Source: Botryllus schlosseri (lineage: Eukaryota). From it: a DNA stretch of 64,000 bases. Below, in pieces: positions 1 through 59,469 of this stretch. The position numbers and the translations under genes are program-made. The DNA is taken from contig CM119386.1 of the NCBI GenBank assembly GCA_051294905.1, positions 2,232,001-2,296,000 on the forward strand. Direction: 5' to 3'. The notes under the pieces were generated by a model. That model was not told the origin of the DNA, ran no database searches, and worked only from the letters and a program-made list of their open reading frames with translations. Position 1 is the first letter of the stretch; each line of letters begins with the position of its first letter.

Positions 1-485
1 TCTGTTATAGAATCCGTTCTATTGAGCTTGAAAAAAAAAATATCTTCAACTGAACTTTTGACTGTTGTTAGAAATACGTTATTATTTATATGATGATTGA
101 TTTTATTTCCTCAGAGCGTCTCAATACACTGAAGGAGGTTTGGGTGATGCAAAAATATTGGGGGAGTATTAATGGCAAATACCCAGTTGCGCATTCAGTG
201 TCAGTAAACTAAATTGGAATTCATATTAGAAAAGCCTTTCACAGTGTACACTGAAATATGCCAAGAGTGTGCCACAGCATGGGTAAAATCTGTGAATCAG
301 TATGATAGATTCACATAATTGCATTCCGTGATTAAGAAAATATGATTACTGTGTATTTTCTTATAAAACGAGATGGACTCTACCTCATGAGGAGGCTGAT
401 CTCAAACACATAGACAAGTTGAAAATTTGCACCGTTCCATTATATCGACTGCTAAAAATAACAACATGCCCCGCACTTTTCAAAG

Positions 486-7400: not shown

Positions 7401-7931
7401 CATTAGAGTGGCAGTGTAGTAGTTAGCGTTGTGGGTTACAGTATGATTAATGTAAGCATCTCAGTGCCATTTGATCTGCATGGCGTTTTTTCATCAAAGT
7501 CAAAGTGCTAAACACCATTAACCCTAAACAACAACAAAATACTATTAGATTGTCATTAACCTTCTAAAGGTGAGAATAAACACCCATGTAATTTTGATAG
7601 AGTGTGATGTTATTGATTCCGCTACTCTACCGAATTCTTCGTAGATGCTAACCGATTCCTCCATTTCCTAGAATGGCAATTTAGTTTCACGAAGTCAATG
7701 CTTCGATGAATTCTGCCGGTGCGATGAAGACACGTGCAGCGTGAACAAAGAGAACGTGGTGTCCTGCGCCGGTGTTAATACAAGAAAATGCATCAACGAG
7801 GATGTAGAACATTTCGGATCACTTCCAGTTCGGGACGGATGCTGCACTACATACAAATGCAATTGTAAGACTTCTTATAATTTTGTGCTTTGACATCGCC
7901 CTCACTATTACTGCTTCGGGCAGACCTGCAT

Positions 7932-16900: not shown

Positions 16901-19900
16901 GAATGTCTGTATCACTATTATAAGTAGCCTATATATTTAGCATATTATTTAAACCACCGAGAAACTTATTCAAAATGGGACATCTATGTAATTAAAATGC
17001 GGTATTATGTCTGAAGGCTCACATAATTACTACATAGCATTGCGATATATGTTATATTTTTTGTAGGATACTACATGTTCATGACCGGTTTCAGTTTAAG
17101 GACCGATCTTGCAAATACTGACATGACAGAATACTGAAAGTATCATTGTGTTATGGATTCTGAATGGAGGCTAACGATGGCCACTGTATAAAGTCATTGA
17201 AATTTAATGATTTATTATTTGTTAATACACATTTAGCATACTCCTTCTGATATGTTGCATGCCAAATGCTTCTTGAAAAAACAAAACTAATACTATTTCT
17301 GGTGTTGTTAGAGAAAATCGGCGATTGCGGATGCACAGCGGAAGCAGTTTGTAGATGCAATGAGGCGTTGTGCCCCACTCTGCCAACATGCGACAGATGC
17401 CACAAGCTGGAAACGTCATATCCCACCAAAAATGACAGTCAACCCTGTGGCGGGAATTGTTGTCCAGTCGGCCGTTGTGTCCCCAAAACATGCCCACCGG
17501 ATACGGCAACGCCAAAAAATTATACTGCGGAATGCCCGTTTTTAGAGGTAATTTGATTTTGATGCATGCGTCCCATTGCAAATATGTTTTTCCCAGGGAT
17601 ATACAGATATCCCTGGTTTTTCCAATCCATTATCCTACCTTTTGATACAACATTAATTTATCTCCTGGCCACTTTACAATTCATGTGTCATATTGTAGGC
17701 TCCTCCAATGAAATAACATTTAGTTATGAACATTTAAGTTATCAAACATACTATTCTGCTTTCATGAATACCGAGAACTATTCAATATTACAATAACCTG
17801 CATGTAACATGCACCTATTTCATAGGCTCGCACAATTTTGCCTTGAAGTGACCTGCAATGATATAATTTACGAGACACAAGGTTCTAGTAGTTGTGCAGT
17901 CTACCTGAATTCTTTAAAAATGATTGAAATTTACTGATGCTATGTGTAAGAGGCAGACAGCCCAAGGTTATGTGAGAAGAGAGGGAGATTGTGGTTTTGA
18001 CTCTGACCTATTCCAGATATGCTAACTCTTTTCCGCATTTCTCCAAAGCAGCATTATATATTCTTTCTCAGGATAAAGGAGAATCTTATGACAAGGATGA
18101 CACAGAAAAGTGTTGTCCAAAACAATACAGTCCGGTTTGCGTCAAAAATAAATGTGACGTGTTCAATACTCCGTCCGAGTGTGAGCCAGGATACGAGATC
18201 CAACAAGTAAAGGTCAACGAAACGTCAAACACCAAAGTATCACTATATCGAAACTGCCCAATGGTTGACGAATGCTGCAAATACAAGGAGTGTGTGTGTA
18301 TATCATGTACGGATGGGTCAGGAAGACTTCTCTTAGGAGAGGAACGTTTGGATGAAAATGGGTGAGAGATCAAAGAATGCTGTTATCGGATAGGAAATAT
18401 TTGGTTCCTGTGTGTAAATAATAAATTTTTGTCCTTCTCTGTTTTTCATTTGAGATTCCACATCTGTTTTTAAGATTCCATAAATCAGATTATTCAATTG
18501 GTAATGCCTATTGAATCAGGCAGAAATACCTGATCAGCACAATACCGCAAAAACATTGCGTTATACGAGACTCAAAAGTTGGAAACTTCAAGCGATCCCC
18601 AATATCATTGATCAGCGCAGCAATGTGTTGTATCACGACTATTCTTAACAAATATCAGCCTGTATACCATGCAATTCTAATATCAAATTTCTCATCGCTT
18701 CAACAGTTGCAAGAGGATCAGTTGTCAGGCTGGTGTCCGAGGGGAGGATGGATGCTACCAAGTAACGGAACGTAAGCCAACATGTCCAGATCCTCCCATA
18801 TGCGACTGTAACCAAAGACTGAAAAAGACGCTGCCCACTGGCGGCGCCACTGACGTCAGCCAATGGTTATCACTGTGCTGCCCACGATACACGTACGTTT
18901 CTCCTCCATTGAATGCTCTCGGTTCACTTCAATTTTCTCGGCTTCAACACTTGCAGGTGTGAAGATTTGCCCTGTCCGGACGGATATCCTTCTGGTCCAA
19001 GCGCGTGCACTGCCCCATCCAAAAGAACTGTTGAATATTTGGTCAGTGGTTGTAACTTTGCCGCCTTGATTTCCGTGCCGATTATTTGCTCGATTTTAGG
19101 ACATTGATGGATGCGTCTATCCGAAGTGCGCAAAGGCCACTTGTAAGTGTGACCTGTGCATCGACGAGGACAATGTCACCCACGCCATCGGCACAGTATT
19201 TCCGGGAAGTGATAAATGTGACGAGTACACCTGTGTCAGAGGTAAGATGGCTTGATACATTCACAAACCAGACTTTTGATTGTAGTACTGTATTATGAAC
19301 GTTTGACCTCAATTGAAGGTCATGCATCTCAGCTCTTTTATGCAACCTAGTTTCTTGAAACCGGATTGCTGATCTAATCTATACGTTATTCACGCAATTT
19401 AAGATCTGGGTGTGTAAAATAATTTATGATGAAAATGAGAGGCCATTGGCACCGAATTTTGTGTGGATATGCAAAATCATGTGACGTCACAATCCCTCCT
19501 TATTAATGATGTCATAGAAACACTAGAATGCACTTTACTGCATGCCTCTGGTGTGCATACAGTGTTAAAACACACATGTGACGTTTTAATACCAGCCCTG
19601 CACTCAAGCCATAGAGTTAGTGTAGGAATTCCTGTATTCAATATTCTGCCAAATCACAAATAACGTTCCGTTTATGCCGGCTTGGTCCGATAATACCTAG
19701 ACCAAGCAACATTTTCCATGATTTCTTTCAGCGGAGGGTGCCGAGTGTCCACATTTGAAAATCACTCGCCAGGAATGCAGCCCAATATTGTGCCAAACTG
19801 ATTTTGAGGAATTGAAATCAGAGAAAGACCCGACCAAGTGTTGCCCGGATCAGGAATGTATCTGCAAGGTGATGCAAAATTTAGAGCTGCTGTTTTTTCG

Positions 19901-25900: not shown

Positions 25901-28900
25901 AATCGGAAGAGGCGGCTTGCCTGCAAACTACAGGTGAGTGCCAACGAATATATAAACACTAATTTAAAGTAGCCATTTATTATCAGGGTTGTAAAAGTTC
26001 CAAGGTTCCCAGTCACAAGTCAATCTCACTTTTATAGTTTTGGCTTGAGTCAAGTCGAGACATTTTCAATCCCCCACCGAGTGCAGTCAGTCACTGTCCA
26101 AGTCAGTGAGCAGCGGGTCGAGTACGAGTCATAGTGTTGTGACATAGCGTTGTTGCTCGAGTCATGAGCAATGACTCAAGTACAAGTCGAGTCAGTTCAC
26201 AAATTGACTCGAGTCGAGTAGAATGTAGTCGTTTTATCCGTTTAAAAAATGACTCGAGTCAAGCTAAGTCACCAAAAATTAGTGACTCAAGCCGGACTCG
26301 AGTCGAGTCATGACCCGAGTCATTGCAACCCTGTTTATTATGCTACATAACTATTTTTCTTGCTCCTATTTTAGATTCCAATGTACGTTTTATGGAACAT
26401 TGAGTCTGAAAATTGTTTATTGTATGATCCGTGCTTATCAATTTTGACCTTATTTTTTTCTCTGCAAGTAGTGTGCCTGTCGTATATGTATTTGAATACT
26501 GCCTATGCACTCGATTTTAAATGGTATTGATATGTGGCTAGGCTCATTTGAACATGTAATGAGCTATTATATAACAGTTTTTTTCAATCACAATCTTCGC
26601 AAGTAACAAAATGTACTCTGTTTAAAGAATCAAAACTTCAAAATTTGGCTGTTGTACGAGCTTTTCTTGTATACCAGAAGTATGGTACTCCATCATTGCA
26701 TTGATCCAGCAGACTTGATAGCGCTTATCTATGGACTGAACTCATCGGTGAAATCTCTCGCCACCAAGCCCGATTTCAGCAGCAATAAACAAATTATGCT
26801 CATACTCATATTTGCAGTAATTGAGGTCCTTAACCTCGTCAGAGTGAAAAGAGAAGTCCGTACGCGGTTATTTTTTAATTATCACCTAACCAGTTGGACT
26901 GGCCTAATCGAGATGCTGAAAATGTTGTTGCAGTAGATTTTGAATCTTCAAATGCTCTTTGTCATGGAAAATTGTTCCAAAGTCGTTATTTGTGTATGTC
27001 CCGCATCAATCTATGAAGTATTTTTTACACCCAACATCAAGTTACGCCGACAAGAACAAGGCAATCATAACCATCGGATTTAGATTAAAATCTCCTAGCA
27101 ATATTTACTACTATCATTATACAAACACAGAAGCACATATGTTTGATGGTGGCATCGCATTTGCTGGATTCCCTAAGACGAAAACGTTTAATGGAGGATG
27201 TTATGATTTTATAAGACTGCGTGTTGTCCTGTCAACCTACAATTACGTTTACTCATCATAAAATGTGTTCACAATTTGAGGATCCCTAGTCCGTATAGAG
27301 ACAAAATTCCACAAAATCTTTTCCAGTATCAACGAATAAATGCAATTGCACGGTCAACGCCGAATGTAAATGTAATCCTGACCTCTGTCCGACCGTGACA
27401 TGCAGTGAATGCGAGATCATGGACGAGAGGGATCCTGTGGTGAATTCATTGGCACCGTGCTCTGGCAGCTGTTGCAAGATAAGAACGTGCATAAAAAAGC
27501 CTTGCCCGTCCGTAACGGTGCCGAACATACCGCCTCTGTGCCCTTTCCTCGAAAAGATAAGTAGCATTTTGTGAATGAAAATACCGAAGTAAATATAGGT
27601 GATAATTTTCGTTACCAGCACAACGAGGTATACGGCAACGATAAATGCTGCCCGGAAAGAATCGATCTCAAATGTACAACAAACACTTCCGATTGCCCGA
27701 TTTCAAGCCCGACTACGTGCGAACCTGGATATCAACTCGAGACTATCCGCGCTGCCGATTCTACTGACATGAGAGTGCGCATGGCTATGAACTGCCCGAT
27801 GGTGGACGAGTGCTGTCCGATTCGCGTATGCGTTTGCAAGTCCTGCGTTTATGAAGGAGGAAGGATGGACCTTGGCGCATCGCCTGTCACTTCACCGGAC
27901 GGGTAAGATTAGCGCAGTGATAGATAGATCATTTATTCAAATTGTTTCACACGGAAAACATGAAAATTTCAAATTATTCATCGGTATAGATAGGGAAGAC
28001 ATGATACGTCAATCCCTTCTCTGTAACACAAAGATTATTCGTTACCGGTTATCATTGCATTCATCACGGACTCTTCCTTGTATTGTTCCGCCGAAATGTC
28101 CTTGAATTCGCACTGCTTAGCAAAGGCACGGCGTTTCTGAACGTACTCAGACATGGTGTTCGAAGGCTGCTGATTCCTATTGTGGCTAACTCATGACCCG
28201 CATAGACAAGAGTCTTCTTTTTCACGTACAAGCCCTCAAGAAATTTCATCGCATCCGTAAACGTCGATTCTTCCTCAACCAGCGAAAAAGATCCAGACGA
28301 CAAGTACCCTGCCATTATACTGAACCTATCCATCTCTGAGTCGCCATCCCTTCTGGCAGCATCAAGGGAAACTTTAGATACGCCTTTATTACGCCCATCC
28401 AGTGCTTGAACGCCTGAACAGCATCATCATCCCTTGGCACAGCCTTTAACTTGGATACGCGAATGAGTGTCTAGTTCGACGCGATAGTAGATCTTTTCAG
28501 TTAATAAAATTCTGGTGACCTCTATTTCACAGAGTATCCAAGGCTTGTATTAACTGAAAACGTGCATTATACGCGACACAGCTAGGCCACCAACTATTAG
28601 GTACCAATAAATAAATTAGGAGGGAGACAATATACAGTGGAGAAGAAATGTTATCAAGTACTAATTCGTTAACTATGTAAAGGACGAGACAATCGCACAG
28701 ATCGATCTAGAACCTATGGCCATGTCCTGAACAATATCCTCTGCTTCTCATGCGGGGCTACGAAATATAATCGACTTGTTCTATACAAATCTATGTGATT
28801 AGACTCAAATAAAAATTTGTAGATTTGTAAGTTTGCTTGGAAAGATCTATCTGAGACTTGTTTTTACCTGTTAATGAAACACATTTCGATGTGCATATTG

Positions 28901-49900: not shown

Positions 49901-52900
49901 GTATGAGTGCGTGTGCAACACAAGCTCCTGCCCGACATTACCATCTGCTGACTGTGACAAATACCAAGTAGAGGTAATAATATATAGATTTCCTCTTCTG
50001 GGTATGCTATCTTACATGTTCTGATGATGAAGTTGACTAGGTATGTGCTGTTTTCAACTCCAAAAAGGTGACATTCATGTTGCTATCAAGAGAAGTATAA
50101 TATTACTGTTGAGATCTGAACAGAGCTAGGAATTATCAACAAAATACCCATATATGACATATATTGTTTCCACTCTCGATTTTGAAATCCAAGCCAGGCA
50201 CACTTTAGGTTCAAAATCAAGCTTCCTTCCCAATGTGTAAGTGTGAGAGACCCATACATAACAATAATCATATGCACCCTCATTTACATTGCCTGGATAC
50301 ATACTCGACAAAATTTAATACCCAAATAAATATTTCATACTCCCCCTATAACAAAGTGCTCTCAATATACCCATCCATCTTGTTGCAAGACCAATCCATT
50401 CTTGAAATCATTTTTCTCGTCGAGTTTGGTCCCCGTATTTGTGTATCGTTTGGCATTACGTATTGAAACGAGACTGTCCCATATAATGCATTATATATAT
50501 GTGAGTTCATCAGAAATCAGTTGATATCAAAATCTCCTGATTATTCGAATCCGGACTTTTGACTAGGCTCGAATCACGTATTATATTCAATATTTAATTT
50601 CAAAATGAATTACCGATTACTGTGTGCATATAAACTTCAATATTTTTGGTCAACAATAAACTCTGGTTCACTATGGTATTAACATATACATATAATTCAT
50701 TGTTCAATGAAATTAGTATGAAATCTGATATTTTGATTACCTTACTCGTAAATCGTGTGCGTGTATTCGTAAATTGACGAACCCAACAGCACAAAATTTA
50801 GTCAGCCATTTTTTAAATCATGTCAAATTAAAAACGTACTGGGTTTACTTTTACATCGATAGCTGATCAATCTAAATTTAATCACAAAATATGGCAATAT
50901 TTACTGTCCATAGTGAATTCTTTTATAACCACATTAGCATGGTTACAGTTACTATCTTTCGTTATCAGGCATATCATACCTCATTTTAAGCAGAATCTGT
51001 TTTCATCTGTTTCCATACCTACTCTTTGGCGCCTGACCCTTTTCGCACCAAATTCTGTAATTGACCGTAAATTTCTCAGTATCCTTGGAAGGACTCAGTG
51101 TCCGCATGTTGCCCAAAAGAAAATCGATGCAAATGTAACCCGGATCCGAATGTGCTGCGTGGACTTTGCAACGAAAGCAGGAACGCGTACAGCGAATGCG
51201 AGACAGGCTACGAGCCGTATGTAGCGAGAGTGATGTCTGAAGATGACAATTCTGGGATATGCTGCGAGGTGCAATGCAAGTGTGTCAGTTGCAAATTGGA
51301 AAATGGAACTGTCGTGAAGGTATGGTAGTGCTTGTTTCCAATATATATAATTTTCTCCAATCCGCTTTATTCAAGTAAAGATAGACCACATGATCACAGC
51401 AATAAATGGATACAAGTATATGTTTTTTCGAAGCATGTCACTGGACACAGTAGAATTATGTAACGTTTCCAAACACAGTAAAAGCTTGTTACCTTGTTTG
51501 TACTCAGCTGCACGTACAAGTATTGCTGCAATTTTCTACTCAACCACTGATTCGGGCAAAACCTGTCCAAGTACAGTATTTCAGTGATGCAGTCACTTGC
51601 TAACCAAGTCTAGAAACACATACATACATGATGTTTGGGTCCCCATTCCTCACGCATTCATTTTTAATCCCGCAATTCCTCATCAACATTCTGATTTCGT
51701 TAAACATTTTTTCAGGTCGGCGAATCATGGACTGAAACAAAGCAATGCAATATCATCGACCATCACTGCTCAAACGAAAAGCTATCGAACACTTGCCACA
51801 AACTCGTCTCAAACGAGCGAGACGTTCCTTGTTCCTATACATCTGCTGATGCCTATGCTGCCGATAATTGTGCTGCGTTTGAGCATGCGGTTGACATTAC
51901 CAGCCCGGGAGGATGCTGCCCAAGCTACCGCTGTGGTGAGCCTTTCTGTTTTACCAAATAGTATTTTCTTTTGCTCATCAATTCTGTTTGAGTATCCGTA
52001 TAATCAGAATGAAGGGTGAAGGCATATTTGAGAATTGGTGACTGTTACCTTTAGAATGTTTTGTCAAAAGATGAAGTCCTAAATAGTTATCTGTTGGAAT
52101 TTCACAATGAACTTGGCTAATGGTACACTCTATGGCAATTTGCCTGATTGTAACTCCAGTCTCCAGGAACATGCAACTGTGTAGGCCTATGTGGACTGAA
52201 ACAGTATATAGTTGCTGCATACCATAATAATATGCATGTGTTACAATTACAATATGCAATTCCGTATGTGGCAATATATCATGGTTACGCTTAGACACTA
52301 TGCAGAAGCAAAACACGGACGGCAAATGCAGAATGTGACACAACCAAAATGAAACTGTAGCACATCTGATGTCCGGCTGTGGTGCACTTGCAGCTACCGA
52401 AAACACATGGAGAGACAATAGGATTGGTCACTACATTCATCTTGAATTATGCAAACATTTTAACATCACCACTTCGACAAAAAATTGGCGCAAAAAAAAG
52501 TGAATGCTGACTCATTAAACTGGCTGTCCCAGCTGATCACAACATACCACAAAAGATTCAGAAAAACAATCCAAATACGCAGAGCTCAAAATGGAATGTG
52601 AGAAAATGTGGTGATGCAAAATAAACATTGTGCCGATAATCATTGGCGCCACAGGGGTCGTGAGCAAAAAACTCATGAGACATATCCAACAGATTCCGGG
52701 TAACGTTCGATTCGACATGATAAAAAAGATCACATTATTGGACACTGTGTATATTCTTCGAAAAGCCTTGAATGCACCAATGGATTAAAATTACACTGGT
52801 GAATCACAGCATAATTTCTGTAATTTCGATTCTTCATTCTCAATCATCTGTAATCTGACTTCTCCATCGCTTGCACAGGAATAACAATTTGAATGTATTA

Positions 52901-55900
52901 CTGAAATTTTAATAATTTACTCCAACCTCACCCTTTTCCTTTTGGGGCAGTTTGCTCCCCGGATTATGTGTGTTTTTACCAGTTTTACTGTGAATAAATA
53001 ATATATTTTTATAATATTTATCAAAGACGTAGTACAGAGGTATATGTAAAGAATGCTAATGTATTTGGAAATTATTATTATTCCAGGCCATGAAAAATTT
53101 TCAAATTTAATTGATGGTATGAGTTGCTTAACAATGGTTTTCTTCGCAACACGGCAACACATCAAATGTGAACTTCATGTTGAAATCCATATTCAACAGA
53201 GCCATGCACAACTTCAACATGGAATTGCGATTCATCAAACGAAGTCAGACTACCGACTGAGAGCAATCCTCGTTGCCCTGGAAACTGCACTTGCGTTCAG
53301 CCAATGCAAGAAAAGAATTTGAAGGCGTGCCGCGAAACTGCAAGTTGTGGGGTGTATGAGAAGCCTCGCTTGCTATCATCAGGCGCCGCTGGGGGTAAAC
53401 AGCACCCGGACCATTGCTGTCCCAATTATGAATGTGTCTGTGACACTTGTCCCAACACTACTGTCACTAGAGACCAGCTTACAGCTAGATCAGAATACTG
53501 TGAGGAGGTTACTGTCCAGCCTCCTGGAGATAGAAAATGCTGCTTGAATTATCATGTCACTTGTGGTGCGGATTGCGCTTGCGAAGAGATAAATCTGATG
53601 TGCAGCTCTACAACTGGCTGTGAGCAAAAGCCGGGTAAGTCCAGCTTAATCTTATCCCTGTTTATTCTTACGTCAAAGGCAGGTAAGATACGGCCCGAAA
53701 CGGGATTTTGAGCTGTCCGCAGACAGTTTTCGGTCTTACATGATAATGTGTACCATGGTCACAGTCTAACGCAATCTACCACATATGTCTCATTGCATTC
53801 AACATCTATTGGAGTACATTAACAAGACAAAGATGCGTTGCAGTCTAACAGATGTTCATGTGCTGTCTATACTAAGGGTTTTTAAGTCTGACAGGCAGCC
53901 AGAGTTCCTCGAACTTGTTAACAATTTTGATCGACCACAGATGTCTTCTTGACTTCAACAGCTATTGAAGAACTTTATGATATCTAATTCATGAGATACT
54001 GTTTTTATGTCTCTAAGCTTTAAACTTGAAGCCGACACTAAATACAATTATTTCCATGTATAGGTGGATGTATCAATTCAGGAATCCGGCCCGCAAGTAC
54101 TTCATTTTTCCTTACCAGGCTAATCGACTGAAGAAGCTGCCCTCCCCTGGCTTAAATGATTGCTTAAATGATATAGAAGTCCCTCCTATATATTTGAGAA
54201 TTGGAAACCCCAATTCGAAAGTATTGCTGTGTTTACGGCATTTGATGCCGTTTCGCAACCACGGTCATTTGTACGCCAGGACTATGCATAATTGCTAAAC
54301 CTTTGGCAAAATTAACTTTGGCTCAATGGTTTTATAAAACAGTACGAGTATAGATACACCTCCAAGACAGGAAGCAGGAATCCTTCACAGTTGAATAAGC
54401 CATATCATGATTATATCCTTTGCTTTTAGTGTCAACGAACCAATGCAATTGCGTGACCGAGGCAGTATGTCAGTGCAACAACGCGACTTGCCCTCAAAAG
54501 TCTTGTGGCGAATGCCAAGAGCTGCAAGTAACGAAACCGACATCGAATCCTGCTCTTACATGCAACGGTAACTGTTGTCCGGAATTGACGTGTGTGCCGA
54601 AGCCCTGTCCGGAACAAGAAGATACGACCATTCCGTCGAAATGTACTCATCTGGAACAGATAAGTGTCTTCTTATATCCTTTTATCGGTTACCCCTGAAA
54701 TCTAGGTCTGAATACAAGCTTCTTCTGTACGTCTTCAGTGCACCAGCGTATCTTTGTGAGCTAGTGTCAATGTAAAATCCTGGAGTAGCTCTACATTCTC
54801 AGTCGCAAAAACTCTTGTCAGTTCCAAGAGTCAGAACACCGACCTACAGATTATTATTATATTATTATTATGTTTGGGATATTTTGTCGAAATATTTTTG
54901 CCAATATATTTACTCTAAACTTTCAACTGACTCTAATCGAAAGCAAACATCAAGAAATACATAGCTTCAAATCAGAAGTAGGCTATTATCAGAATTACTG
55001 TTTGTGACATACCCTTACAGACAAAACATACATCCCAAGATACCATCGGCCGCTAAAACGCACGATACATCGTAACCACAAAAATGCTGATACATTACCA
55101 CAGCACCATCGAAATATACCTTTGTACTATTCATTATTCTAAGCTTTTCTTGTAAGGCCTCTGTCCAAAATGTTAGAGTGACTAAATTGTCCGTTCGTAC
55201 ACATTGTTTTCTGCTACCTCAACGTTCAGTACCATTAAAACATTGCAGTGATATCTATAGTTTCTATATATACCTGAAACATTGTAGCAATGCATATTAA
55301 TTTCTGGTTGATGAAATGTAATTGATGCTGTGTGACGACTGTGCCATAATATTTAATGTTAAATTGAAAAAACTATGTATGGCGTCTATCATTTCAATAA
55401 TTATAAGATGAAGTCATTTTCCTCTGGAGTTTTCAAAGGCACTGAATTTGATATCCCTAATAATGTAAAAATTACCTGTGTAATCAAGGGTGTTGAGAAG
55501 CAACGTGAATAAACAAGTCTAGTTTGTGATGAAAAAATACCTTATTAGGTAAATTCCATTGAAATGGTCTTATTATTTTGGTTGGGGTTAGGGTTATGGA
55601 AAAACTCCTCATCTCAAAACAGGTCGCTGCAATGGATAGCAAGACAGAGCCGCTTTCTTCATAGATGAATTATGGTCATTTGTCTGTTCCATATTTCCTG
55701 AGATTTACTCTTGGTTCTTTTCAGCACAAATTGGACTATTCGAACGATACGTGCTGTCCTAACAAGGAAATCGCCTGCAAAACCGTTCTCAACGAATGCC
55801 CTTACCCGATTTTGACGTCTTGTCCGGAAGGTTTCGATCTGCATACGACCCCAGCGGCAGACTCCACTGACTCGACCGTGTCCAATGTTGCTGACTGCCC

Positions 55901-58900
55901 GATGATCGATAAATGTTGCCCGCATAGAACTTGCGTTTGCAACTCTTGCAAATATCCGAATGGCACCCTTAACGTTGGTTCCGAGCCTGTGTTTTCAGCG
56001 GACAGGTAGGAAATATTTCGATTTTAAAGACACGCGAAATCTTTATGTAGAAAGGTTCAATAACAAACTGATTTTACCTTTTCTATATACCCGGGTGCAT
56101 ATATAAACTGCTTCAGTATTTAGTTCACTAAAACTTCCGTTAAACTTGAAATATATTTACGTACTAAGAAACCACAGCTTTAAATAAAATTATAGAGACG
56201 ACAGATTTCGTGTTAACAAGAGAGGCTGTTTACATATTCATTTGGGTGCCTCAAAGTCTACTTTTAGAAAAATACTCCAATCAAGTCTGTGCTGAGCTTT
56301 GCGACGCGATTGTTCATGTACAATGCTCTTTCCAATTCTCTACTAGTTACTCACAATCACCCCTGACAAGTGTCAGTCGAAAATCTTGGGTTCATTAAAA
56401 TGTGAATATAGGCTACTAATTAATTGTATATCGTAGCCATTTACTTCCAAGAAGCTCTATGTTATTTAATCATTCATATAATCACCAAACCAGCAATCAG
56501 GGTTGTAATGACTCGAGTCACGAATTTTTTGTGACTCGACTTGACTCGAGTCATTTTCTTGAAATGGGAAAATGACTCGACTCGACTCGAGTCAATATTT
56601 GGATTGACTCGACTTGTACTCGAGTCATTGCGCGTGACTCAACTCAAGTCATTGACTCGGCTTATTTTATGTGACTTGAAGGTGAAGAAAGTTGCGAATC
56701 ACGATGGTTAGATCAACGCATGTCACGAATTCTGTCGACATCGTTATTTGTCACCACTGCTTTCGTTGCACTCCTCTGATATCAGATATGCGCCGCCGTA
56801 AAAACAAAAGACAATGGTACATAGTAGCAAAGAGCAATGCATTGTACAAAATCATCCAGTGATGAAGAGGTAATAGATCCTCCGCCATCAAAGTACTCAA
56901 GACATTTCAATTATACAAGCAAACAATCGAAGCAAAGTCCAATTAGAGCCAAAGAAATGACTCGGATGGTCAAGTAGCCTACTTGGAAGAGACTGATAAG
57001 CTCATGTGTAGATATGAAGTCGATGATTCTTTGCATTTTTGGCCGGCTAGAATGGATGAGTATCTAATGGTCTTCAGTGTGGTTCAAAATTGGATTTCAA
57101 TTCCTGCATCTAATGCACCAGAGGAACGTGTATCCAGTGGATGTGGATTATTCTAAGGCCATGCCGCCTCAACATATATGAGAATCTCCTTTTCACTTTA
57201 GTATTTTTCAAGTGTAACTCATTGATTTGATCTGGTGTCTGTGAAAACACACAATACCCTCCGTCCGTTTGACGTTTTGTTAGGTATGTGCATTGTGCAC
57301 GTGATAATAATGAATGGCTAATGTTGTGTGATATTTGTACAATGGGGCCGATCAAAAATACCTTCTTTTTTATTCTATTTGGTGGCTACATGATAAAATT
57401 GCTACGTTGCATAAAAAGAACACTGAATCTGGCCTAATTTGAAAAAGTGGAATCAATGAAATGAGAGGAGAAAATTTTGGATTTGAAAATACATGGAGTA
57501 TTTTAGTGAGAAATGATTTCATATAATATAATTACATACTAGCAGTAAGTCGACTATTTTTTCATATCCGAAATATTCTACTCTAATAACTCCGCTTCTT
57601 CTAGTTGGAATTGAGCCAAATTTTCTATGAATCATATTTTTACACAATCTAACAATATCATGAGGTAGCCGGTATATTTCGAAAGTCTCTATTTGTAATT
57701 AATCCAAAATATTTTCTCTTAGCATTGCTTTCTACTGGTTGGAATTAAGCCAAATTTAGGTTCTTTTAGATAATCTAACAATTTTAAGAAGTAGCCTCTT
57801 TTTTGAGATTCTGTCCTCATTTTTGAGAATTTTTTTGGTAATCATAGGGCAAATTAGACTAAGATACAGTGAATCAGCACTAAAGTAACGCTCCGGCGAC
57901 TATTTCGGCAGCTGAGCAGGAAAGTTGACCTTTTTTTCTGGTCAACCACCTGATATGATGTGAAAGCAAAACTGTACCTCTACATAAGCGTTTATCTGAT
58001 GAATCTGTACCAGCTTGTATCTAGCTAGACGTGAATTCGGAGGTCTTCTATCAGATAGTATGTAGACGCGAATTCGTTAATTCTCTATAAGCTATTGGTG
58101 AGCGGTCGTCGATGTGCTCGTTATAAAAACTTAATGCTTTTATTTGTGATATATCAGACTGACAAGACAGATATTTGATTTAAAGTTCTAAGATTAATAA
58201 CGTTATCGTATTGGCGGCATGTCTCGTCTATCTGTAGCATCGGTATATGAGGCCAGGAACTGTCTGTTATCTGCCTAACTAAATAAACTTGTACCAAGAC
58301 TATGATAGGGACAAAATAAGCATGTTTGGCAAGCAAGAAACTCGATATCACCCAAGCAGGATTGAAAACATAAGTTGAACATGACTTCAATAGTGTGACT
58401 TGGACTCGACTCGAGTCATAACACTATGACTCGGACTTGACCCTTAAAACGGTGACTTGGACTCGGACTCGAGTCGGTGATTAATTGAAAATGACTCGAC
58501 TCGACTCGAGTCAAAACCAAAAAAGTCAGATTGACTCGTGACTCGGAACCATGTGACTTGGTTACAACCCTGCCAGCAATTCGCGCCTATGCTTGAAGCA
58601 TTATGGACTAATTTAAAATCAGCCATCAGTACCTGTGCGAGATCGAAGCTTTTCTACATTACATACCTTTACTACAAAAGTGTAAGCGACCACTTCAATT
58701 ATCTCTCACTCTATACAATGTGTTTTAAAAGATGCACAAAATACACATGCACGAACGGTGCCAAAGATGCGGACGGCTGCTATGTTGTGACTGAAGAGAG
58801 ACCCCAGTGTAGCCCCGCCCCACTATTGAAATGCTACCAAGAGTTGGAGACTCCGGCTGCCTCTCCCAGTGCTACGACAGCAAACGGCTTCTCATCGAAT

Positions 58901-59469
58901 TGCTGCCCTCAAAACAGGTAATTCGGAAGTAATTTGGATCTTACTCATATACTGCATGAAGGGCAAATTCGATTTGGGTATTGATTGTAATGGTTCTAGT
59001 CAACTACTGAGGCAAGATTTTTTTTGTACACCTCTTTCAACCAAGTGTGATACTAATAACAAGAATTGCTATTGCTACTTTCTTCCCACCTTCAGAGCCT
59101 TGACATCTTGGTTGGCCGTATGGTATCATCCAAAACTATATACTTATGTAGAAACGGCATTGTTGTGCGTAGCGATTACCCATCATTGTCGCAAATCAGA
59201 ATTAAAAAGGAATAATCGGAAATATACCTATTTATCCTCAATTTCATATGTGACTGGCGAAATTTCTACGTTGTAACAAGAATGAATGCTTGACTCGGCC
59301 TGAAGCGTAATTTTTTATTCGGAATCTCATATCTTGGTTACTCGCTTTTTCACAACCCTAGCCGCATGTGCTCTGTTTTTGTAGCGTTGCGGAGAAATCT
59401 TGTGGACCAGACTACGTAGCAGGGCCTGATTCGTGTGCTTTTCCGAGAGTATTGCAAACTTCGTATAAG
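486..59469 (+). CDS. Giant multi-exon vWF/gel-forming mucin-like secreted protein (partial: D3 end - mini PTS - Cys-rich - D4 - tandem Cys-rich super-repeats with trefoil inserts); 62 exons in window, continues beyond both ends
   Basis: Hand-traced exons with polypyrimidine-AG acceptors and GT donors (three AT donors) splice into one stop-free frame with matching intron phases; 10,962 nt = 3,654 codons. VWD, C8 and TIL motifs are recognisable by similarity to vWF/MUC2-type D assemblies. No start or stop codon in the window. Confidence 0.93.
1036..1292 (+). mobile_element. tRNA-derived SINE
   Basis: A-box-like TAGTGTAATGG (1042-1052) and B-box GGTTCGATCCC (1086-1096), followed by a body (ACCAAAGACTC...GGTATCCGCGGCTATCCTG...) that recurs inverted at about 60800-61075. 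Confidence 0.8.
2274..3448 (+). CDS. Thr/Pro/Ser-rich mini mucin segment on micro-exons (2274-2294, 3211-3231, 3395-3448)
   Basis: Three phase 1-1 exons of 21, 21 and 54 nt, each with an AG acceptor and a G|GTA donor, read [32 protein letters not shown]. Further micro-exons could have been missed. Confidence 0.72.
3603..7864 (+). CDS. Cys-rich vWC-like linker between PTS and D4 (exons 3603-3652, 4549-4689, 5006-5119, 6637-6779, 6841-6979, 7672-7864)
   Basis: AYRLCPNTC.../[15 protein letters not shown].../[35 protein letters not shown].../ECERASC...[16 protein letters not shown]...[24 protein letters not shown]...[10 protein letters not shown]. All phases are compatible; 61-nt intron at 6780-6840. 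Confidence 0.87.
5546..6301. mobile_element. hAT (Charlie-like) MITE
   Basis: Termini CCGTGGTTCTCAAC ... GTTGAGAACCAC with subterminal GGGGTCCGC repeats; TSD not clear. Confidence 0.6.
7936..7968. repeat. (AG)n microsatellite
   Basis: Perfect AG run. Other short runs: (AG)n 15700-15718, (CTAGCA)n about 39437-39465, (CAT)n about 61662-61679, (GTT)n about 63712-63731. Confidence 0.9.
8455..13606 (+). CDS. VWD domain of D4 assembly (exons 8455-8578, 9312-9414, 9472-9682, 13438-13606)
   Basis: [31 protein letters not shown] at the start and [18 protein letters not shown]...DEFGNSW near the end are hallmark VWD motifs (GDPHY.TFDG; GLCG.C...DD; FG.SW). Confidence 0.93.
9845..10030 (-). mobile_element. 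Related tRNA-derived SINE (diverged subfamily)
   Basis: Reverse complement reads ...GTGAGTTCAATCCCCGGCCGGGTCAGACCAAAGACT...ACTGGTATC..., matching the head and core of the 1036 SINE. Confidence 0.65.
10807..12060. mobile_element. hAT-type non-autonomous element with internal ~320-bp duplication of its 3' part
   Basis: TIRs CAGGACCGTAAC / GTTACAGCCCTG (10/12); 8-bp TSD GGTGTATG / GGTGTTTG (7/8); 11413-11720 is repeated at about 11731-12050. Confidence 0.7.
12069..13101 (+). mobile_element. hAT element with decayed transposase C-terminal fragment
   Basis: 16-bp TIRs CAGACTTGGACAACTA / TAGTTGTCCAAGTCTG. The internal frame [27 protein letters not shown] (about 12520-12610) resembles the hAT dimerisation domain (D.L.WW....FP.L). 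Confidence 0.7.
14327..16245 (+). CDS. C8-4 and TIL4 modules of D4 (exons 14327-14477, 15201-15285, 16066-16245)
   Basis: ...[12 protein letters not shown].../[28 protein letters not shown] (C8-type Y...C...V.WR...C), then [23 protein letters not shown]...[22 protein letters not shown] (TIL). Confidence 0.88.
16612..16872 (+). CDS. Cys-rich exon leading into the super-repeat array
   Basis: Phase 1-1 exon [13 protein letters not shown]...[11 protein letters not shown]...[18 protein letters not shown]. Its end resembles the end of the last exon of each repeat unit (CPTIDLNC). Confidence 0.82.
17312..25933 (+). CDS. Super-repeat unit 1 (12 exons, 824 aa, no trefoil)
   Basis: Exons 17312-17547, 18072-18361, 18707-18892, 18957-19041, 19100-19241, 19732-19868, 20491-20660, 21341-21469, 22153-22351, 23066-23305, 24595-24814, 25496-25933; all GT-AG. 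About 114 Cys and 13 CC dyads by hand count. Confidence 0.92.
25984..26333 (+). mobile_element. hAT MITE with GACTCGAGTC palindrome arrays
   Basis: TIRs CAGGGTTGTAA / TTGCAACCCTG and a perfect 8-bp TSD TTTATTAT. Confidence 0.85.
27327..40734 (+). CDS. Super-repeat unit 2 (13 exons incl. trefoil, about 854 aa)
   Basis: Exons 27327-27556, 27619(or 27622)-27902, 29116-29271, 29336-29423, 29604-29745, 32517-32657, 33110-33246, 33715-33884, 35223-35354, 35419-35614, 37032-37271, 38957-39173, 40306-40734. Each is homologous to, and in the same phase as, its unit 1 counterpart. Confidence 0.9.
27557..27621 (+). other. Non-canonical intron, AT donor (AAG|ATAAGT ... TTACCAGCAC), unit 2
   Basis: Read-through hits TGA within 6 codons. 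Homology requires a phase-0 junction after CPFLEK. The acceptor is AG (27618) or AC (27621), both in frame. Confidence 0.78.
29950..30510 (+). mobile_element. CR1/L2-type LINE 3' fragment
   Basis: Broken frames [18 protein letters not shown] / [14 protein letters not shown] and [15 protein letters not shown] resemble the CR1/L2 ORF2 C-terminus, followed by a 3' UTR shared with four other fragments. Confidence 0.7.
30880..31135 (+). mobile_element. CR1/L2-type LINE 3' UTR fragment with AATAAA and (ACTGA)n-like tail
   Basis: Aligns with 30270-30510 and, inverted, with 37505, 41975 and 61680. Confidence 0.6.
31200..32349 (+). mobile_element. GACTCGAGTC-family hAT derivative (left end decayed)
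   Basis: GAGTC/GACTC arrays at 31200-31320 and 32180-32340; right TIR TTACAACCCTG ends at 32349. Confidence 0.6.
32517..32657 (+). CDS. Trefoil (P-type) domain cassette exon, unit 2
   Basis: Phase 1-1 exon [47 protein letters not shown]. The six-Cys spacing with GCCYD matches the trefoil motif (C...R..C...C...GCC(F/Y)D...C(F/Y)). Confidence 0.82.
33895..34715. mobile_element. hAT-type MITE inserted 10 nt into an intron
   Basis: Imperfect TIRs (left TAGAGCGTTTTTTTTTTGTCA; right TGTCAAAAAATAACCGCGCTA); TSD ATGATACC / ATGATAAC (7/8); subterminal AAATTTTGAC repeats. Confidence 0.65.
37505..37870 (-). mobile_element. CR1/L2-type LINE 3' fragment
   Basis: Inverted copy of the same 3' UTR with a (TTCAA)3 tail at about 37508-37525. 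Confidence 0.65.
39660..40170 (+). mobile_element. GACTCGAGTC-family hAT MITE
   Basis: Starts CAGGGTTGTGA, body aligns with 25984-26333, right TIR degraded. Confidence 0.7.
41491..53634 (+). CDS. Super-repeat unit 3 (13 exons incl. trefoil, about 870 aa)
   Basis: Exons 41491-41720, 43273(or 43276)-43553, 45307-45498, 45555-45639, 45695-45836, 46753-46899, 47351-47487, 48570-48739, 49555-49686, 49775-49973, 51080-51319, 51716-51935, 53200-53634. Confidence 0.9.
41975..42340 (-). mobile_element. CR1/L2-type LINE 3' fragment
   Basis: Reverse strand [18 protein letters not shown] followed by the shared 3' UTR. Confidence 0.68.
42610..43205. repeat. Foldback / long inverted-repeat element
   Basis: Arms of about 200 bp (AAATTTTACTGGCTACC... 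/ ...GTAGCCAGTGAAATT); a related copy lies at about 57370-57815. Confidence 0.65.
43701..44278. mobile_element. hAT Charlie-like MITE
   Basis: TIRs CAGTGGTTCTCAAC / GTTGAGAACCACTC and a perfect 8-bp TSD CTCTAATA. Confidence 0.85.
46160..46625. repeat. Inverted pair of hammerhead-bearing repeats (about 165-bp arms)
   Basis: 46166-46320 is the reverse complement of 46450-46610. Similar pairs lie at about 35764-35990 and 48826-49250. Solo arms lie at about 7005-7110, 10160-10240, 24080-24260 and 56335-56420. Confidence 0.75.
46559..46592 (+). ncRNA. Minimal type I hammerhead ribozyme motif (best-preserved sense copy)
   Basis: ACTC-CTGACGA-G-tgtcagc-C-GAAA-ATGT-T-A-GGGT: intact CUGANGA/GAAA core, 1-bp stem II, near-palindromic AATGTT stem III, UUA triplet, stem I ACTC/GGGT. 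Structure inferred by eye; activity untested. Confidence 0.55.
46753..46899 (+). CDS. Trefoil (P-type) domain cassette exon, unit 3
   Basis: Phase 1-1 exon [49 protein letters not shown]; 26/44 residues identical to the unit 2 trefoil. Confidence 0.82.
54430..59469 (+). CDS. Super-repeat unit 4 (first 4 exons; rest not found in window)
   Basis: Exons 54430-54659, 55725(or 55728)-56005, 58732-58917, 59385-59469 ([29 protein letters not shown]), homologous to the first four exons of units 1-3. Confidence 0.88.
54660..55727 (+). other. Non-canonical intron, AT donor (CAG|ATAAGT ... TTTTCAGCAC), unit 4
   Basis: Same position (after CTHLEQ); acceptor AG at 55724 or AC at 55727. Confidence 0.78.
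56498..58572 (-). mobile_element. Long GACTCGAGTC-family hAT derivative with transposase relic and nested foldback
   Basis: TIRs CAGGGTTGTAA / TTACAACCCTG and perfect 8-bp TSD CCAGCAAT. The arrays run opposite to the 25984 copy. A + strand relic [17 protein letters not shown] (about 57097-57147) resembles the hAT motif SIPASSA.VER.FS. Confidence 0.8.

What the first reader, a model, noticed from the sequence alone, without database searches (positions are those of the whole stretch)
17312..59469. vWF/mucin with a massively expanded C-terminal Cys rod: 12-exon, 824-870 aa super-repeat, at least 3.3 copies
Seen: after D4 the gene repeats a 12-exon block with conserved exon sizes (e.g. 142/142/142, 137/137/137, 170/170/170, 240/240/240 nt), phases and Cys spacing. 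Each unit has 13 CC dyads and about 14% Cys, with many N-X-S/T sequons. Known: vWF has six C domains after D4 and gel-forming mucins have fewer; their length comes from A domains or PTS between D3 and D4. Inference: here polymer length appears to come from tens of disulfide-locked vWC-like modules, suggesting a stiff fibre or net-forming protein (e.g. a filter-feeding mucus net or adhesive) rather than a classical glycan gel. I do not recognise this higher-order repeat as a described architecture.
Basis: partly seen in the sequence, partly recalled or inferred. Interest (0 to 1): 0.75.

Follow-up and report, generated by a model that had tools for sequence, protein, structure and literature searches.

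The report
Giant sea-squirt VWF-like gene, four-fold cysteine rod
A colonial sea squirt has a real, transcribed giant gene of the von Willebrand factor / mucin family whose tail is an ~850-residue, 12-13-exon cysteine-rich block repeated four times, an unusual build whose role (perhaps a fibre of feeding slime) is untested.

Summary
On the + strand a 12-exon block (13 with a trefoil exon) repeats with conserved exon sizes, intron phases and cysteines. U1 is 17312-25933 (820 aa), U2 27327-40734 (856 aa), U3 41491-53634 (868 aa). U4 starts at 54430 and runs past the window.

Extending the locus shows four units, not tens. The fourth is divergent and is followed by a VWC-like module and a cystine-knot-like end, about 18.4 kb beyond the window. 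Upstream lie three VWD-C8-TIL assemblies and a probable D4. There is no PTS or VWA region.

Spliced contigs from two public runs confirm six junctions, including unit 1 to unit 2 and an AT-AC intron. The genome is Botryllus schlosseri or a close relative.

The modules are invisible to Pfam and to PDB sequence search. One confidently modelled module weakly matches VWF C4 and fibronectin type I folds. The E12 and E10 unit exons, searched as profiles, matched only this gene in the genome. E12 has one homologue among 1.84 billion proteins.

Verdict: a new variant of the VWF/gel-forming-mucin family. A polymer or fibre role is inferred, and tissue expression is untested. The scan noted a comparable Cys-module rod gene on other DNA of this genome (s1-234243).

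The parts
462..854 (+). C8 domain exon (462-668) and a following Cys-rich, TIL-like exon (678-854) of the third D assembly (D3). The VWD of D3 lies just upstream of the window.
   Evidence: Pfam C8 E=4.3e-15 for 462-668. D3 VWD exons upstream: L012:7241-7627 (E=1.7e-9) and L012:9469-9879 (E=1.4e-5).
4549..7890 (+). Cys-module exons between D3 and D4, within open frames 4549-4830, 4937-5173, 6628-6819, 6806-6991 and 7672-7890. They are of the same module kinds as the repeat unit. No PTS or VWA is present.
   Evidence: BLASTP similarity to unit exons E3, E6, E1/E9 and E9. No Pfam family on these or neighbouring frames. No S/T/P-rich stretch anywhere in the gene.
9454..9723 (+). End of the VWD domain of the fourth D assembly (probable D4).
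   Evidence: Pfam VWD E=0.0036, 18 bits, below the gathering score. A GLCG motif is visible in the translation.
16044..16265 (+). TIL domain exon of the probable D4.
   Evidence: Pfam TIL E=3.5e-5, 24.3 bits against a cut-off of 24.5.
16611..16886 (+). Cys-rich exon (14 Cys in 92 aa) between D4 and unit 1.
   Evidence: Open frame with weak similarity to E9. No Pfam hit.
17312..25933 (+). Super-repeat unit 1: 12 exons, 2463 nt, 820 aa, no trefoil exon. Exons: 17312-17547, 18072-18361, 18716-18892, 18957-19041, 19100-19241, 19732-19868, 20491-20660, 21341-21469, 22153-22351, 23066-23305, 24595-24814, 25496-25933.
   Evidence: Splice and phase model with no stop codon. The E11-E12 joint and the E12-to-unit-2 joint are seen in spliced contigs.
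27327..40734 (+). Super-repeat unit 2: 13 exons, 856 aa. Exons: 27327-27556, 27622-27902, 29116-29271, 29336-29423, 29604-29757 (alternative donor 29745), 32517-32657 (trefoil), 33110-33246, 33715-33884, 35223-35354, 35419-35614, 37032-37271, 38957-39173, 40306-40734.
   Evidence: Model. Joints E1-E2, E2-E3, E3-E4 and E4-E5 are seen in runs X1 and X2. A loose end after 29757 equals the start of the trefoil exon at 32517.
41491..53634 (+). Super-repeat unit 3: 13 exons, 868 aa. Exons: 41491-41720, 43276-43553, 45307-45498, 45555-45639, 45695-45836, 46753-46899 (trefoil), 47351-47487, 48570-48739, 49555-49686, 49775-49973, 51080-51319, 51716-51935, 53200-53634.
   Evidence: Model. It has no stop codon and all phases match U1 and U2. 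There is no direct RNA evidence here.
54430..59469 (+). Super-repeat unit 4, first four exons: 54430-54659, 55728-56005, 58732-58917, 59385-59469. The unit continues beyond the window, in window-style coordinates: E5 64253-64394, trefoil 66138-66269, E6 69325-69461, E7 70439-70608, E8 70667-70804, E9 72216-72408, E10-like 73259-73444, and a fused 918-nt exon 75202-76119. A VWC-like module follows (78353-78532, 79447-79583, 79627-79680), then cystine-knot-like exons 80918-81057 and 82296-82417 ending in a stop.
   Evidence: tblastn of unit exons on the extended locus. Splice model and in-frame path to the stop. Pfam Trefoil on L003:2140-2268.
32517..32657 (+). Trefoil (P-type) domain cassette exon of unit 2, phase 1-1. 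It sits between E5 and E6, inside a VWC-like Cys pattern.
   Evidence: Pfam Trefoil E=7.4e-8, above the gathering score. Spliced to E5 in run X2.
46753..46899 (+). Trefoil domain cassette exon of unit 3.
   Evidence: Pfam Trefoil E=7.9e-7. 76% DNA identity to the unit-2 cassette over 491 nt, flanking intron included (32458-32933 against 46687-47174), whereas other introns of the units are unalike.
27557..27621 (+). 65-nt AT-AC intron between E1 and E2 of unit 2. The homologous introns of unit 3 (41721-43275) and unit 4 (54660-55727) have the same ATAAGT...CAGCAC ends. Unit 1 has GT-AG here.
   Evidence: Joint 27556>27622 with ends AT..AC in contigs of runs X1 and X2. Only this splice keeps the frame.

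Best explanation
The window holds the middle of one very large gene of a botryllid sea squirt (Botryllus schlosseri or a near relative). The gene encodes a secreted protein of the von Willebrand factor / gel-forming-mucin superfamily.

Shown:
- Order along the locus: three N-terminal VWD-C8-TIL assemblies (D1, D2, D3); a short run of Cys modules; a probable D4; four copies of a ~820-870-aa block of about 13 small disulfide-type modules; one more VWC-like module; and a cystine-knot-like C-terminus.
- About 3,700 aa lie from the start of unit 1 to the stop.
- Units 2-4 each carry one trefoil domain on a symmetric cassette exon.
- The gene is transcribed and spliced as modelled, at least across units 1-2.
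- The units are old copies with an almost invariant cysteine framework.

Inferred from the family:
- The cystine knot dimerises tails in the ER, and the D assemblies link heads, giving long disulfide-bonded concatemers as in VWF and MUC2.
- The spacer between the linking ends is a long chain of compact N-glycosylated Cys modules, not a glycan brush (PTS) or A domains. The product should therefore be a thin, protease-resistant filament or mesh element rather than a hydrated gel.
- The three regularly spaced trefoil domains would act as lectin-like cross-linking or cargo-binding points.

Most likely site of use is a secreted extracellular net or film of this filter feeder. The endostyle mucus net is the first candidate. 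This last step is speculation.
For: - Repeat and gene model.
- Transcription and splicing: GT-AG joints 24814>25496, 25933>27327 (unit 1 to unit 2), 27902>29116, 29271>29336 and 29423>29604, and the AT-AC joint 27556>27622, in contigs of runs X1 and/or X2 from two studies.
- Family: Pfam VWD, C8 and TIL on exons of D1-D3 (E from 3.5e-4 down to 5.4e-10); C8 at E=4.3e-15, TIL at 3.5e-5 and a weak D4 VWD; trefoil three times; and C-x-G-x-C ... C-x-C-C-x-P ... C-x-C at the C-terminus.
- No PTS and no VWA between D3 and D4.
- Constraint: 110 of 116 Cys columns invariant, dS saturated.
- Module fold: model residues 147-236 have 10-residue block mean pLDDT mostly 72-89. The top match of 48,161 chains is VWF C4 (Z 5.6, rmsd 2.0, 46 aa). 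FN1 modules score about Z 5, and CCN3 and VWF C6 VWC domains align over 69 aa. Weak hits to the C-terminal parts of otogelin-like, MUC5B, NELL2 and VWF point the same way.
- Organism: an HSP70 ORF is 97% and 95% identical to B. schlosseri HSP70s and 82% to Styela clava.
- Context: VWF-like genes mark glandular endostyle zones in Ciona and Botryllus (PMC8462739, PMC2527998, PMC13635237).
Against: - No exon of the units reaches any Pfam family at E<=1, and none matches a PDB sequence.
- The structural matches are below the level that separates true relatives from common small folds (Z under 8).
- The E12 module has no fold match at all (best Z 2.4).
- The cystine knot rests on a motif only and lacks the last Cys of the PROSITE pattern.
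- D4 rests on sub-threshold or borderline HMM hits.
- Junctions U2-U3 and U3-U4, the 5' end and the signal peptide were not verified.
- Two bulk RNA-seq runs showed no reads on the exons, so expression is restricted or low, and no tissue is known.
- Polymerisation, stiffness and trefoil ligand binding are all inferred.
Confidence: 0.6

Rival explanations
1. The protein is the same, but it has a different job. It could be a component of the gut barrier membrane (like Ciona Ci-GFM1), of the tunic, or of clot-like material in wound or allorejection reactions, rather than of the feeding net.
For: - Ci-GFM1, a D1-D2-D'D3-D4-VWC-CK protein, is a major component of the Ciona gut envelope membrane (PMC6109156).
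- A Botryllus VWF-like transcript is also induced in macrophage-like blood cells during rejection (PMC2527998).
- Botryllus has several VWF-like genes of unclear orthology (PMC13635237).
- No tissue data were obtained here.
Against: Nothing here speaks against it. It differs from the best explanation only in the site of action. The protein lacks the chitin-binding domains that define the Ci-GFM1 role: only sub-threshold CBM_14 hits were seen (E 0.025 and 0.12).
Confidence: 0.25
2. The Cys-module array works as a growth-factor (BMP/TGF-beta) trap, as in Kielin/KCP, CRIM1, chordin or NELL. These proteins carry long VWC arrays, and the array would then not be a structural rod.
For: The nearest feature and fold neighbours include VWC2L, NELL2, CRIM1/CRM-1 and chordin. 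Kielin-type proteins combine many VWC repeats with a VWD domain (own knowledge).
Against: - Those matches are all non-significant.
- The protein has the full polymerising layout (three N-terminal D assemblies, a D4, a cystine-knot-like tail) that BMP modulators lack.
- The modules fail the Pfam VWC model.
- About 50 modules in four constrained copies, plus trefoil lectin domains, fit a structural spacer better.
Confidence: 0.08
3. The units are not one gene. They could be a tandem array of separate genes or decaying pseudogene copies, or an assembly duplication.
For: Only the unit 1 to unit 2 junction was seen in RNA. Two RNA-seq runs had no reads on the exons.
Against: - All 41 modelled unit exons in the window (12+13+13 of U1-U3 plus the first 4 of U4) are open, with conserved phases and canonical or AT-AC splice sites.
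- Unit boundaries are phase-1 to phase-1, and one is spliced in run X2.
- The Cys framework is under strong constraint.
- The copies are only 43-47% identical, so they are not haplotigs or collapsed repeats.
- No unit has its own start or signal-like exon.
Confidence: 0.03

Closest known systems
Human von Willebrand factor (D1-D2-D'D3-A1-A2-A3-D4-C1..C6-CK)
   Same: It has three N-terminal VWD-C8-TIL assemblies, a further D assembly, a run of small Cys modules after D4 and a cystine-knot-like end. The best structural neighbour of the one well-modelled module is VWF C4.
   Different: - No A domains.
- About 50 modules after D4 instead of six.
- The modules are organised as a four-fold ~850-aa, 12-13-exon super-repeat.
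- They are not recognised by the Pfam VWC model.
- Three trefoil domains are inserted.
- Further Cys modules replace the A region between D3 and D4.
Vertebrate gel-forming mucins (MUC2, MUC5AC, MUC5B)
   Same: The same head (D1-D2-D'D3), D4, C-terminal Cys modules and CK layout. Weak fold hits fall on the C-terminal parts of MUC2 and MUC5B. Like these mucins, it is linked to trefoil domains (own knowledge: TFF peptides partner these mucins).
   Different: There is no PTS region and no CysD anywhere in the locus, so it is not a mucin in the strict sense. Here the trefoil domains are part of the polypeptide. Glycosylation would be mainly N-linked (11-14 sequons per unit).
Ciona Ci-GFM1 (2,880 aa) and the endostyle VWF-like genes CiVWFL1/2 and Botryllus BvWF
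   Same: These are tunicate members of the same superfamily. Ci-GFM1 has D1, D2, D'D3, D4, two VWC and CK (PMC6109156). The VWFL genes are endostyle-zone markers (PMC8462739, PMC2527998). Lang et al. counted 17 multi-VWD proteins in Ciona (PMC4948705).
   Different: Ci-GFM1 has only two VWC domains after D4, and it also has chitin-binding and FN2 domains. Orthology between Ciona and Botryllus VWF-like genes is stated to be unclear (PMC13635237). No Ciona or Styela protein matched the E12 profile.
Same-genome paralogue noted by this scan (s1-234243): a VWF-like polymer with about 23 VWC-like modules between D3 and D4
   Same: It follows the same principle: the polymerising head and tail of the family, with a chain of small Cys modules as spacer and no PTS or VWA.
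   Different: The rod there lies between D3 and D4 and is not reported as a higher-order repeat. The E12 and E10 exons of the present unit occur nowhere else in the genome. I did not examine that locus myself.
Kielin / KCP / CRIM1 (long VWC arrays) and FCGBP (higher-order VWD-C8-TIL super-repeat)
   Same: Kielin, KCP and CRIM1 have long tandem arrays of VWC-type modules. FCGBP has a multi-domain block duplicated as a unit (own knowledge; FCGBP is discussed in PMC4948705).
   Different: Kielin, KCP and CRIM1 lack the D1-D3 head and CK tail, and they are BMP modulators. The repeated block in FCGBP is VWD-C8-TIL, not Cys modules after D4.

Membership tests
VWF / gel-forming mucin superfamily (multi-VWD polymer proteins) | Three N-terminal VWD-C8-TIL assemblies (D1, D2, D'D3) | tested here: met
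   Pfam on exon translations upstream of and at the start of the window. VWD was hit six times: start and end of D1, D2 and D3, with E from 3.5e-4 to 5.4e-10. C8 was hit three times (2.7e-12, 1.4e-9, 4.3e-15). TIL scored 3.9e-9.
VWF / gel-forming mucin superfamily (multi-VWD polymer proteins) | A fourth D assembly (D4) before the C-terminal Cys modules | tested here: inconclusive
   VWD at E=0.0036, 18 bits, below the cut-off of 22.9. TIL at 24.3 bits against a cut-off of 24.5. There is no C8 hit on 14274-14582. GLCG and DDF...FGNSW motifs are visible.
VWF / gel-forming mucin superfamily (multi-VWD polymer proteins) | C-terminal cystine knot (CTCK) | tested here: inconclusive
   A coherent in-frame model ends with ...C-x10-C-x-G-x-C...C-x-C-C-x-P-x10-C...C-x-C-SGH-stop. 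The split exons give no Pfam hit, and the last Cys of the PROSITE pattern is missing.
Gel-forming mucin in the strict sense | Long Pro/Thr/Ser-rich (PTS) O-glycosylated region, often with CysD domains | tested here: not met
   From -30 kb to +84 kb around the window start, no 40-aa window in any + strand open frame has 55% or more S+T+P. The units are 21-23% S+T+P.
von Willebrand factor orthologue | Three VWA domains between D3 and D4 | tested here: not met
   The open frames between D3 and D4 give no VWA hit. The interval holds Cys-module exons related to the unit.
VWC (VWF type C / chordin-like CR) domain | Match to the family profile (Pfam PF00093) | tested here: not met
   No hit at E<=1 for any unit exon or for the 319-aa exon that holds whole modules. 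No PDB sequence match either. Most candidate VWC-like modules are split by introns, which lowers the power of exon-wise searches.
VWC (VWF type C / chordin-like CR) domain | Two-subdomain VWC fold (FN1-like SD1 plus SD2) | tested here: inconclusive
   Model residues 147-236 have 10-residue block mean pLDDT mostly 72-89. VWF C4 scores Z 5.6 (rmsd 2.0 over 46 aa), FN1 modules Z 4-5, CCN3 vWC Z 3.8 over 69 aa, and VWF C6 Z 3.3 over 69 aa. All are below the Z of about 8 that the tool's notes ask for.
Trefoil (P-type) domain | Match to Pfam PF00088 above the gathering score, with the six-Cys pattern | tested here: met
   U2 scores 32.6 bits, U3 29.3 bits and U4 33.1 bits, against a cut-off of 21.

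The most novel reading that the evidence does not exclude
This gene may encode a structural filament of the ascidian pharyngeal mucus net, a material whose protein composition I could not find described in the literature searched. It would be a VWF-type concatemer whose spacing between cross-links is set by a hierarchical rod of about 50 Cys modules in four constrained ~850-aa units. Trefoil lectin domains nested at one-unit intervals would serve as the cross-linking or particle-binding points. In-frame skipping of whole units (all unit borders and the trefoil exon are phase 1) would be a way to tune filament length.
Probability: 0.12. Interest if true: 0.8.

Novelty: new variant of a known kind. 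Interest (0 to 1): 0.5.

Why it matters
Tunicates and lancelets feed with a fine rectangular mucus net secreted by the endostyle, the thyroid homologue. In the papers I could search, its molecular make-up is not defined, and VWF-like genes are only used as zone markers.

A transcribed VWF-family gene with no glycan brush and no A domains, but with a ~3,700-aa, four-fold, cysteine-locked rod carrying regularly spaced trefoil domains, is a concrete candidate for a non-gel, fibre-type use of the mucin/VWF polymerisation machinery.

It also shows how such proteins grow. Duplication of a 12-exon block bounded by phase-1 introns was followed by later spread of a trefoil cassette exon. The case gives a rare, RNA-verified set of paralogous AT-AC introns.

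If it is only one more of the many lineage-specific multi-VWD proteins of tunicates, the value is mainly descriptive.

Tried and rejected
- Pfam on single exons of unit 1, on E10 and E12 of unit 2, on the 319-aa fused exon and on the C-terminal exons: nothing at E<=1 except trefoil.
- phmmer and hmmsearch against PDB sequences with the 319-aa exon and the E12 profile: nothing relevant.
- E12 profile against 1.84 billion representative proteins: one true hit, P0001, a 119-aa fragment. It comes from two metagenome contigs that carry a complete E12-like exon with splice sites. A Rotaria protein at E=2.8e-4 looks like a chance Cys/Gly-pattern match.
- Scan of JGI metagenome contigs with the E12 alignment: no relative.
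- E12 and E10 profiles against the animal's own genome: only the copies in this gene, plus one weak hit on C14.
- ESM-Atlas feature search: weak VWC/NELL2 leads only (score 0.77).
- AlphaFold2 of the fused exon: poor overall (mean pLDDT 51.6), so only residues 147-236 are usable. E12 model: pLDDT 69, no fold match.
- hhalign of the unit against itself: internal relatedness of sub-blocks is only modest (best off-diagonal probability 81%). BLASTP gives U2 4-488 against U1 390-803 at 24% identity, E=2.5e-19. I do not claim a clean half-unit repeat.
- dN/dS: not computable because dS is saturated.
- Spliced proteins could not be given to the family, homology or folding tools, which accept contiguous references only, so whole-unit HMM and structure searches were not done.
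- Full-length orthologues in Styela, Ciona or Botrylloides could not be searched with modules other than E12, because of the length window of the search for homologous proteins and the single representative-library job.
- Rejected: an amphioxus origin, which was my first guess from the genome size and the 19 pieces in the scan's notes. The HSP70 test points to Botryllus.
- Rejected: SCO-spondin, because no TSP1 or LDLa exons were seen.
Full report
**1. What is in the sequence**

Six-frame scanning shows a long series of Cys-rich, stop-free segments on the + strand only.

An all-against-all BLASTP of these segments shows that the series from about 17.3 kb repeats at about 27.3, 41.5 and 54.4 kb. 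Each segment matches its counterparts at 31-59% identity.

Choosing splice sites by conservation, consensus and reading-frame continuity gives a block of 12 exons. Exon lengths are nearly identical in every copy: E5 142, E6 137, E7 170, E10 240 nt, and the others within 3-21 nt. Intron phases are identical. Each block begins and ends in phase 1, so whole blocks can be added or removed in frame.

17312 is the acceptor of E1 of unit 1, and 59469 is the donor of E4 of unit 4.

The spliced units have these properties:

| Unit | Length (aa) |
|---|---|
| U1 | 820 |
| U2 | 856 |
| U3 | 868 |

- Across the three units: Cys content 13.6-13.8%, 13-14 CC dyads and 11-14 N-X-S/T sequons.
- The sequon count is about 1.8 times the shuffle mean, and only 1.7-2.9% of shuffles reach it.
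- Pairwise identity is 43-47%.
- Of 116 Cys columns, 110 are invariant in the three complete units, against 22% of other columns.
- Synonymous sites are saturated.

The copies are therefore old and constrained, not an assembly artefact.

**2. Transcription**

One search for sequencing runs found runs of the same (coded) organism whose contigs hold about a fifth of the sampled words of 22100-30000. That is roughly the exonic share.

Laying X1, X2 and two raw RNA-seq runs on 24400-30399 gave contigs that skip exactly the modelled introns:

| Joint | Junction | Splice ends / note |
|---|---|---|
| 24814>25496 | E11-E12 | GT-AG |
| 25933>27327 | E12 of unit 1 to E1 of unit 2 | GT-AG; run X2 |
| 27556>27622 | E1-E2 | AT..AC; both runs |
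| 27902>29116 | E2-E3 | GT-AG |
| 29271>29336 | E3-E4 | GT-AG |
| 29423>29604 | E4-E5 | GT-AG |

A contig end after 29757 continues with the first 30 bases of the trefoil exon at 32517.

The two bulk RNA-seq runs had no reads on the exons, so expression is not ubiquitous.

**3. The rest of the gene**

The window is G000:C16:2232001-2296000. I fetched 60 kb upstream and 80 kb downstream.

*Downstream*, unit 4 continues with:
- E5 and a trefoil exon;
- E6-E9 and a shortened E10;
- a single 918-nt exon that replaces E11 and E12. It holds two E11-like modules.

After unit 4 come a VWC-like module on three exons and two exons with a cystine-knot-like pattern that end in a stop at window-style coordinate 82417. 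One in-frame path with good splice sites links them all.

The array therefore has four units, the last divergent, and about 3,700 aa lie between the start of unit 1 and the stop.

*Upstream*, exon translations hit Pfam as follows:
- VWD start and end for three assemblies, C8 three times and TIL;
- a fourth assembly before the units, supported by a sub-threshold VWD and a borderline TIL.

Between D3 and D4 there are only Cys-module exons related to unit exons. No VWA is present. No S/T/P-rich stretch exists anywhere in the locus.

The 5' end was not determined.

**4. The trefoil exons**

Units 2, 3 and 4 have an extra phase 1-1 exon between E5 and E6. It scores above the Pfam gathering threshold for the trefoil domain. 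Unit 1 has none.

By Cys pattern, the insertion point lies inside a VWC-like module, between the '...C-x-Y-T-C' of E5 and the next Cys of E6.

The unit 2 and unit 3 cassettes share 76% DNA identity over 491 nt, including intron sequence. The introns of the units are otherwise unalike. The cassette was therefore copied between units after the units had diverged.

**5. What the modules are**

By eye, each unit has three longer modules with a VWC-like pattern: C-x-C...G...[WFY]...C...C...C...C...CC-P-x3-C. They span E2/E3, E5/E6 and E10/E11. About ten shorter modules end in CC-P-x3-C-x-C.

Sequence methods do not see them. No Pfam family hits any exon, not even the 319-aa exon that holds complete modules, and no PDB sequence matches.

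*AlphaFold2 of the 319-aa exon* was poor overall. One module, residues 147-236, is usable: the unit E11 exons align to it, and its 10-residue block mean pLDDT is mostly 72-89. Results of an all-against-representatives structural search for this module:

| Match | Z | Aligned |
|---|---|---|
| VWF C4 (top of 48,161 chains) | 5.6 | rmsd 2.0 over 46 aa |
| Fibronectin type I modules | 4-5 | - |
| CCN3 VWC | 3.8 | 69 aa |
| VWF C6 | 3.3 | 69 aa |
| Collagen IIA VWC | 3.0 | 68 aa |

Foldseek hits are non-significant but of the same kind: FN1, VWF C4, NELL2, and the C-terminal parts of MUC2, MUC5B and otogelin-like.

*The E12 model* has pLDDT about 80 over its first 80 residues. It matched no solved fold (best Z 2.4) and gave only weak VWFC, CRIM1 and otogelin-like neighbours in AFDB.

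I therefore call the modules 'VWC-like in part, unclassified in part'.

**6. Distribution**

- A profile of E12 found only this gene's three copies in the animal's genome. E10 gave the same result.
- Among 1.84 billion representative proteins, the only true hit is a 119-aa fragment. It comes from two metagenome contigs that carry a complete E12-like exon with splice sites. It is 50% identical to unit 3, 44% to unit 2 and 39% to unit 1.
- This is evidently DNA of another animal, so the module is not confined to this genome.
- Styela clava proteins are in that library, yet none matched E12.

**7. Organism and context**

An intronless HSP70 ORF of the genome is 97% and 95% identical to the two Botryllus schlosseri HSP70 entries and 82% to Styela clava. 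The animal is Botryllus schlosseri or a close botryllid. This agrees with the 'sea squirt' label in earlier notes of this scan.

From the literature:
- Ciona has 17 multi-VWD proteins (PMC4948705).
- Ci-GFM1 is a D1-D2-D'D3-D4-2xVWC-CK protein of the gut envelope membrane (PMC6109156).
- The CiVWFL genes are endostyle-specific (PMC8462739).
- A Botryllus VWF-like EST labels endostyle zones 2 and 4, and rejection-activated blood cells (PMC2527998).
- The 2026 Botryllus atlas states that orthology of VWF genes between Ciona and Botryllus is unclear (PMC13635237).
- I found no paper describing this super-repeat or the protein composition of the mucus net.

**8. Mechanism and verdict**

Shown: one transcribed gene with the head and tail of the VWF/mucin polymer family, and a four-fold, ~850-aa, cysteine-locked module array with three embedded trefoil domains in place of a glycan brush.

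Inferred from the family:
- tail-to-tail dimerisation through the knot and head-to-head linking through the D assemblies;
- concatemers whose spacer is a long chain of compact N-glycosylated modules, so a filament or mesh element rather than a gel;
- trefoil domains acting as lectin-like contact points.

The site of action is open. The endostyle mucus net is the first candidate, and gut membrane, tunic or clot material are the rivals.

It is a new variant of a known kind. The family and the idea of Cys-module rods in tunicate VWD proteins are not new: this scan reported one on another chromosome (s1-234243, which I did not re-examine). The higher-order 12-13-exon unit after D4, its private module types and the nested trefoils have no described counterpart that I could find.

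Noticed in passing
window 27557-27621 (also 41721-43275 and 54660-55727): The E1/E2 intron of units 2-4 has AT-AC ends with a U2-like donor (AG|ATAAGT ... CAGCAC|). The homologous intron of unit 1 is GT-AG. The 65-nt copy is removed exactly as AT..AC in contigs of two runs.
   Followed up: partly
window 29745-29757, 32517, 46753: E5 of unit 2 has two donors 12 nt apart, both phase 1. An X2 contig ending at 29757 runs into the unit-2 trefoil exon. Another, ending at 29745, runs into 30 bases that match the unit-3 trefoil exon with 2 mismatches and do not match unit 2. This could be in-frame skipping of one whole unit, a polymorphic or converted cassette in that individual, or an assembly chimera.
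   Followed up: partly
window 26000-26400 and 30000-30400: Intronic stretches show contig depth in the hundreds to more than 10,000 (exons: 4-11), many loose ends, and reads in all four runs. They are transcribed dispersed repeats inside the introns.
   Followed up: no
L017 (642 nt) and L018 (615 nt), metagenome contigs ERZ23499066 / ERZ27264312: Two metagenome assemblies hold a complete E12-like exon, with acceptor and donor. It is 39-50% identical to the three E12 copies. It is presumably DNA of another ascidian in those samples.
   Followed up: partly
G000:C14:4684720-4684968: There is a weak E12-profile match (E=0.0046) inside an uninterrupted open frame of 2,223 aa, possibly another giant Cys-rich protein encoded on one very long exon.
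   Followed up: no
beyond the window: window-style 75202-76119 (L004:1202-2119): In unit 4, the part homologous to E11 and E12 is one 918-nt exon with two E11-like modules. This points to intron loss and remodelling at the last unit.
   Followed up: partly
window 11029-11211; also about 50.7 kb upstream and 59.6 kb downstream of the window: A recurring short open frame (...VTC.S.RCA[RK]T[IL][GS]SEKTLAEK.C...) occurs in introns and flanks. It looks like a dispersed element family.
   Followed up: no
G000:C7:13732348-13742132 and C7:10738250-10740061: There are three intronless HSP70 genes. Two form a divergent pair within 10 kb. They are 95-97% identical to the two published Botryllus schlosseri HSP70s.
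   Followed up: partly
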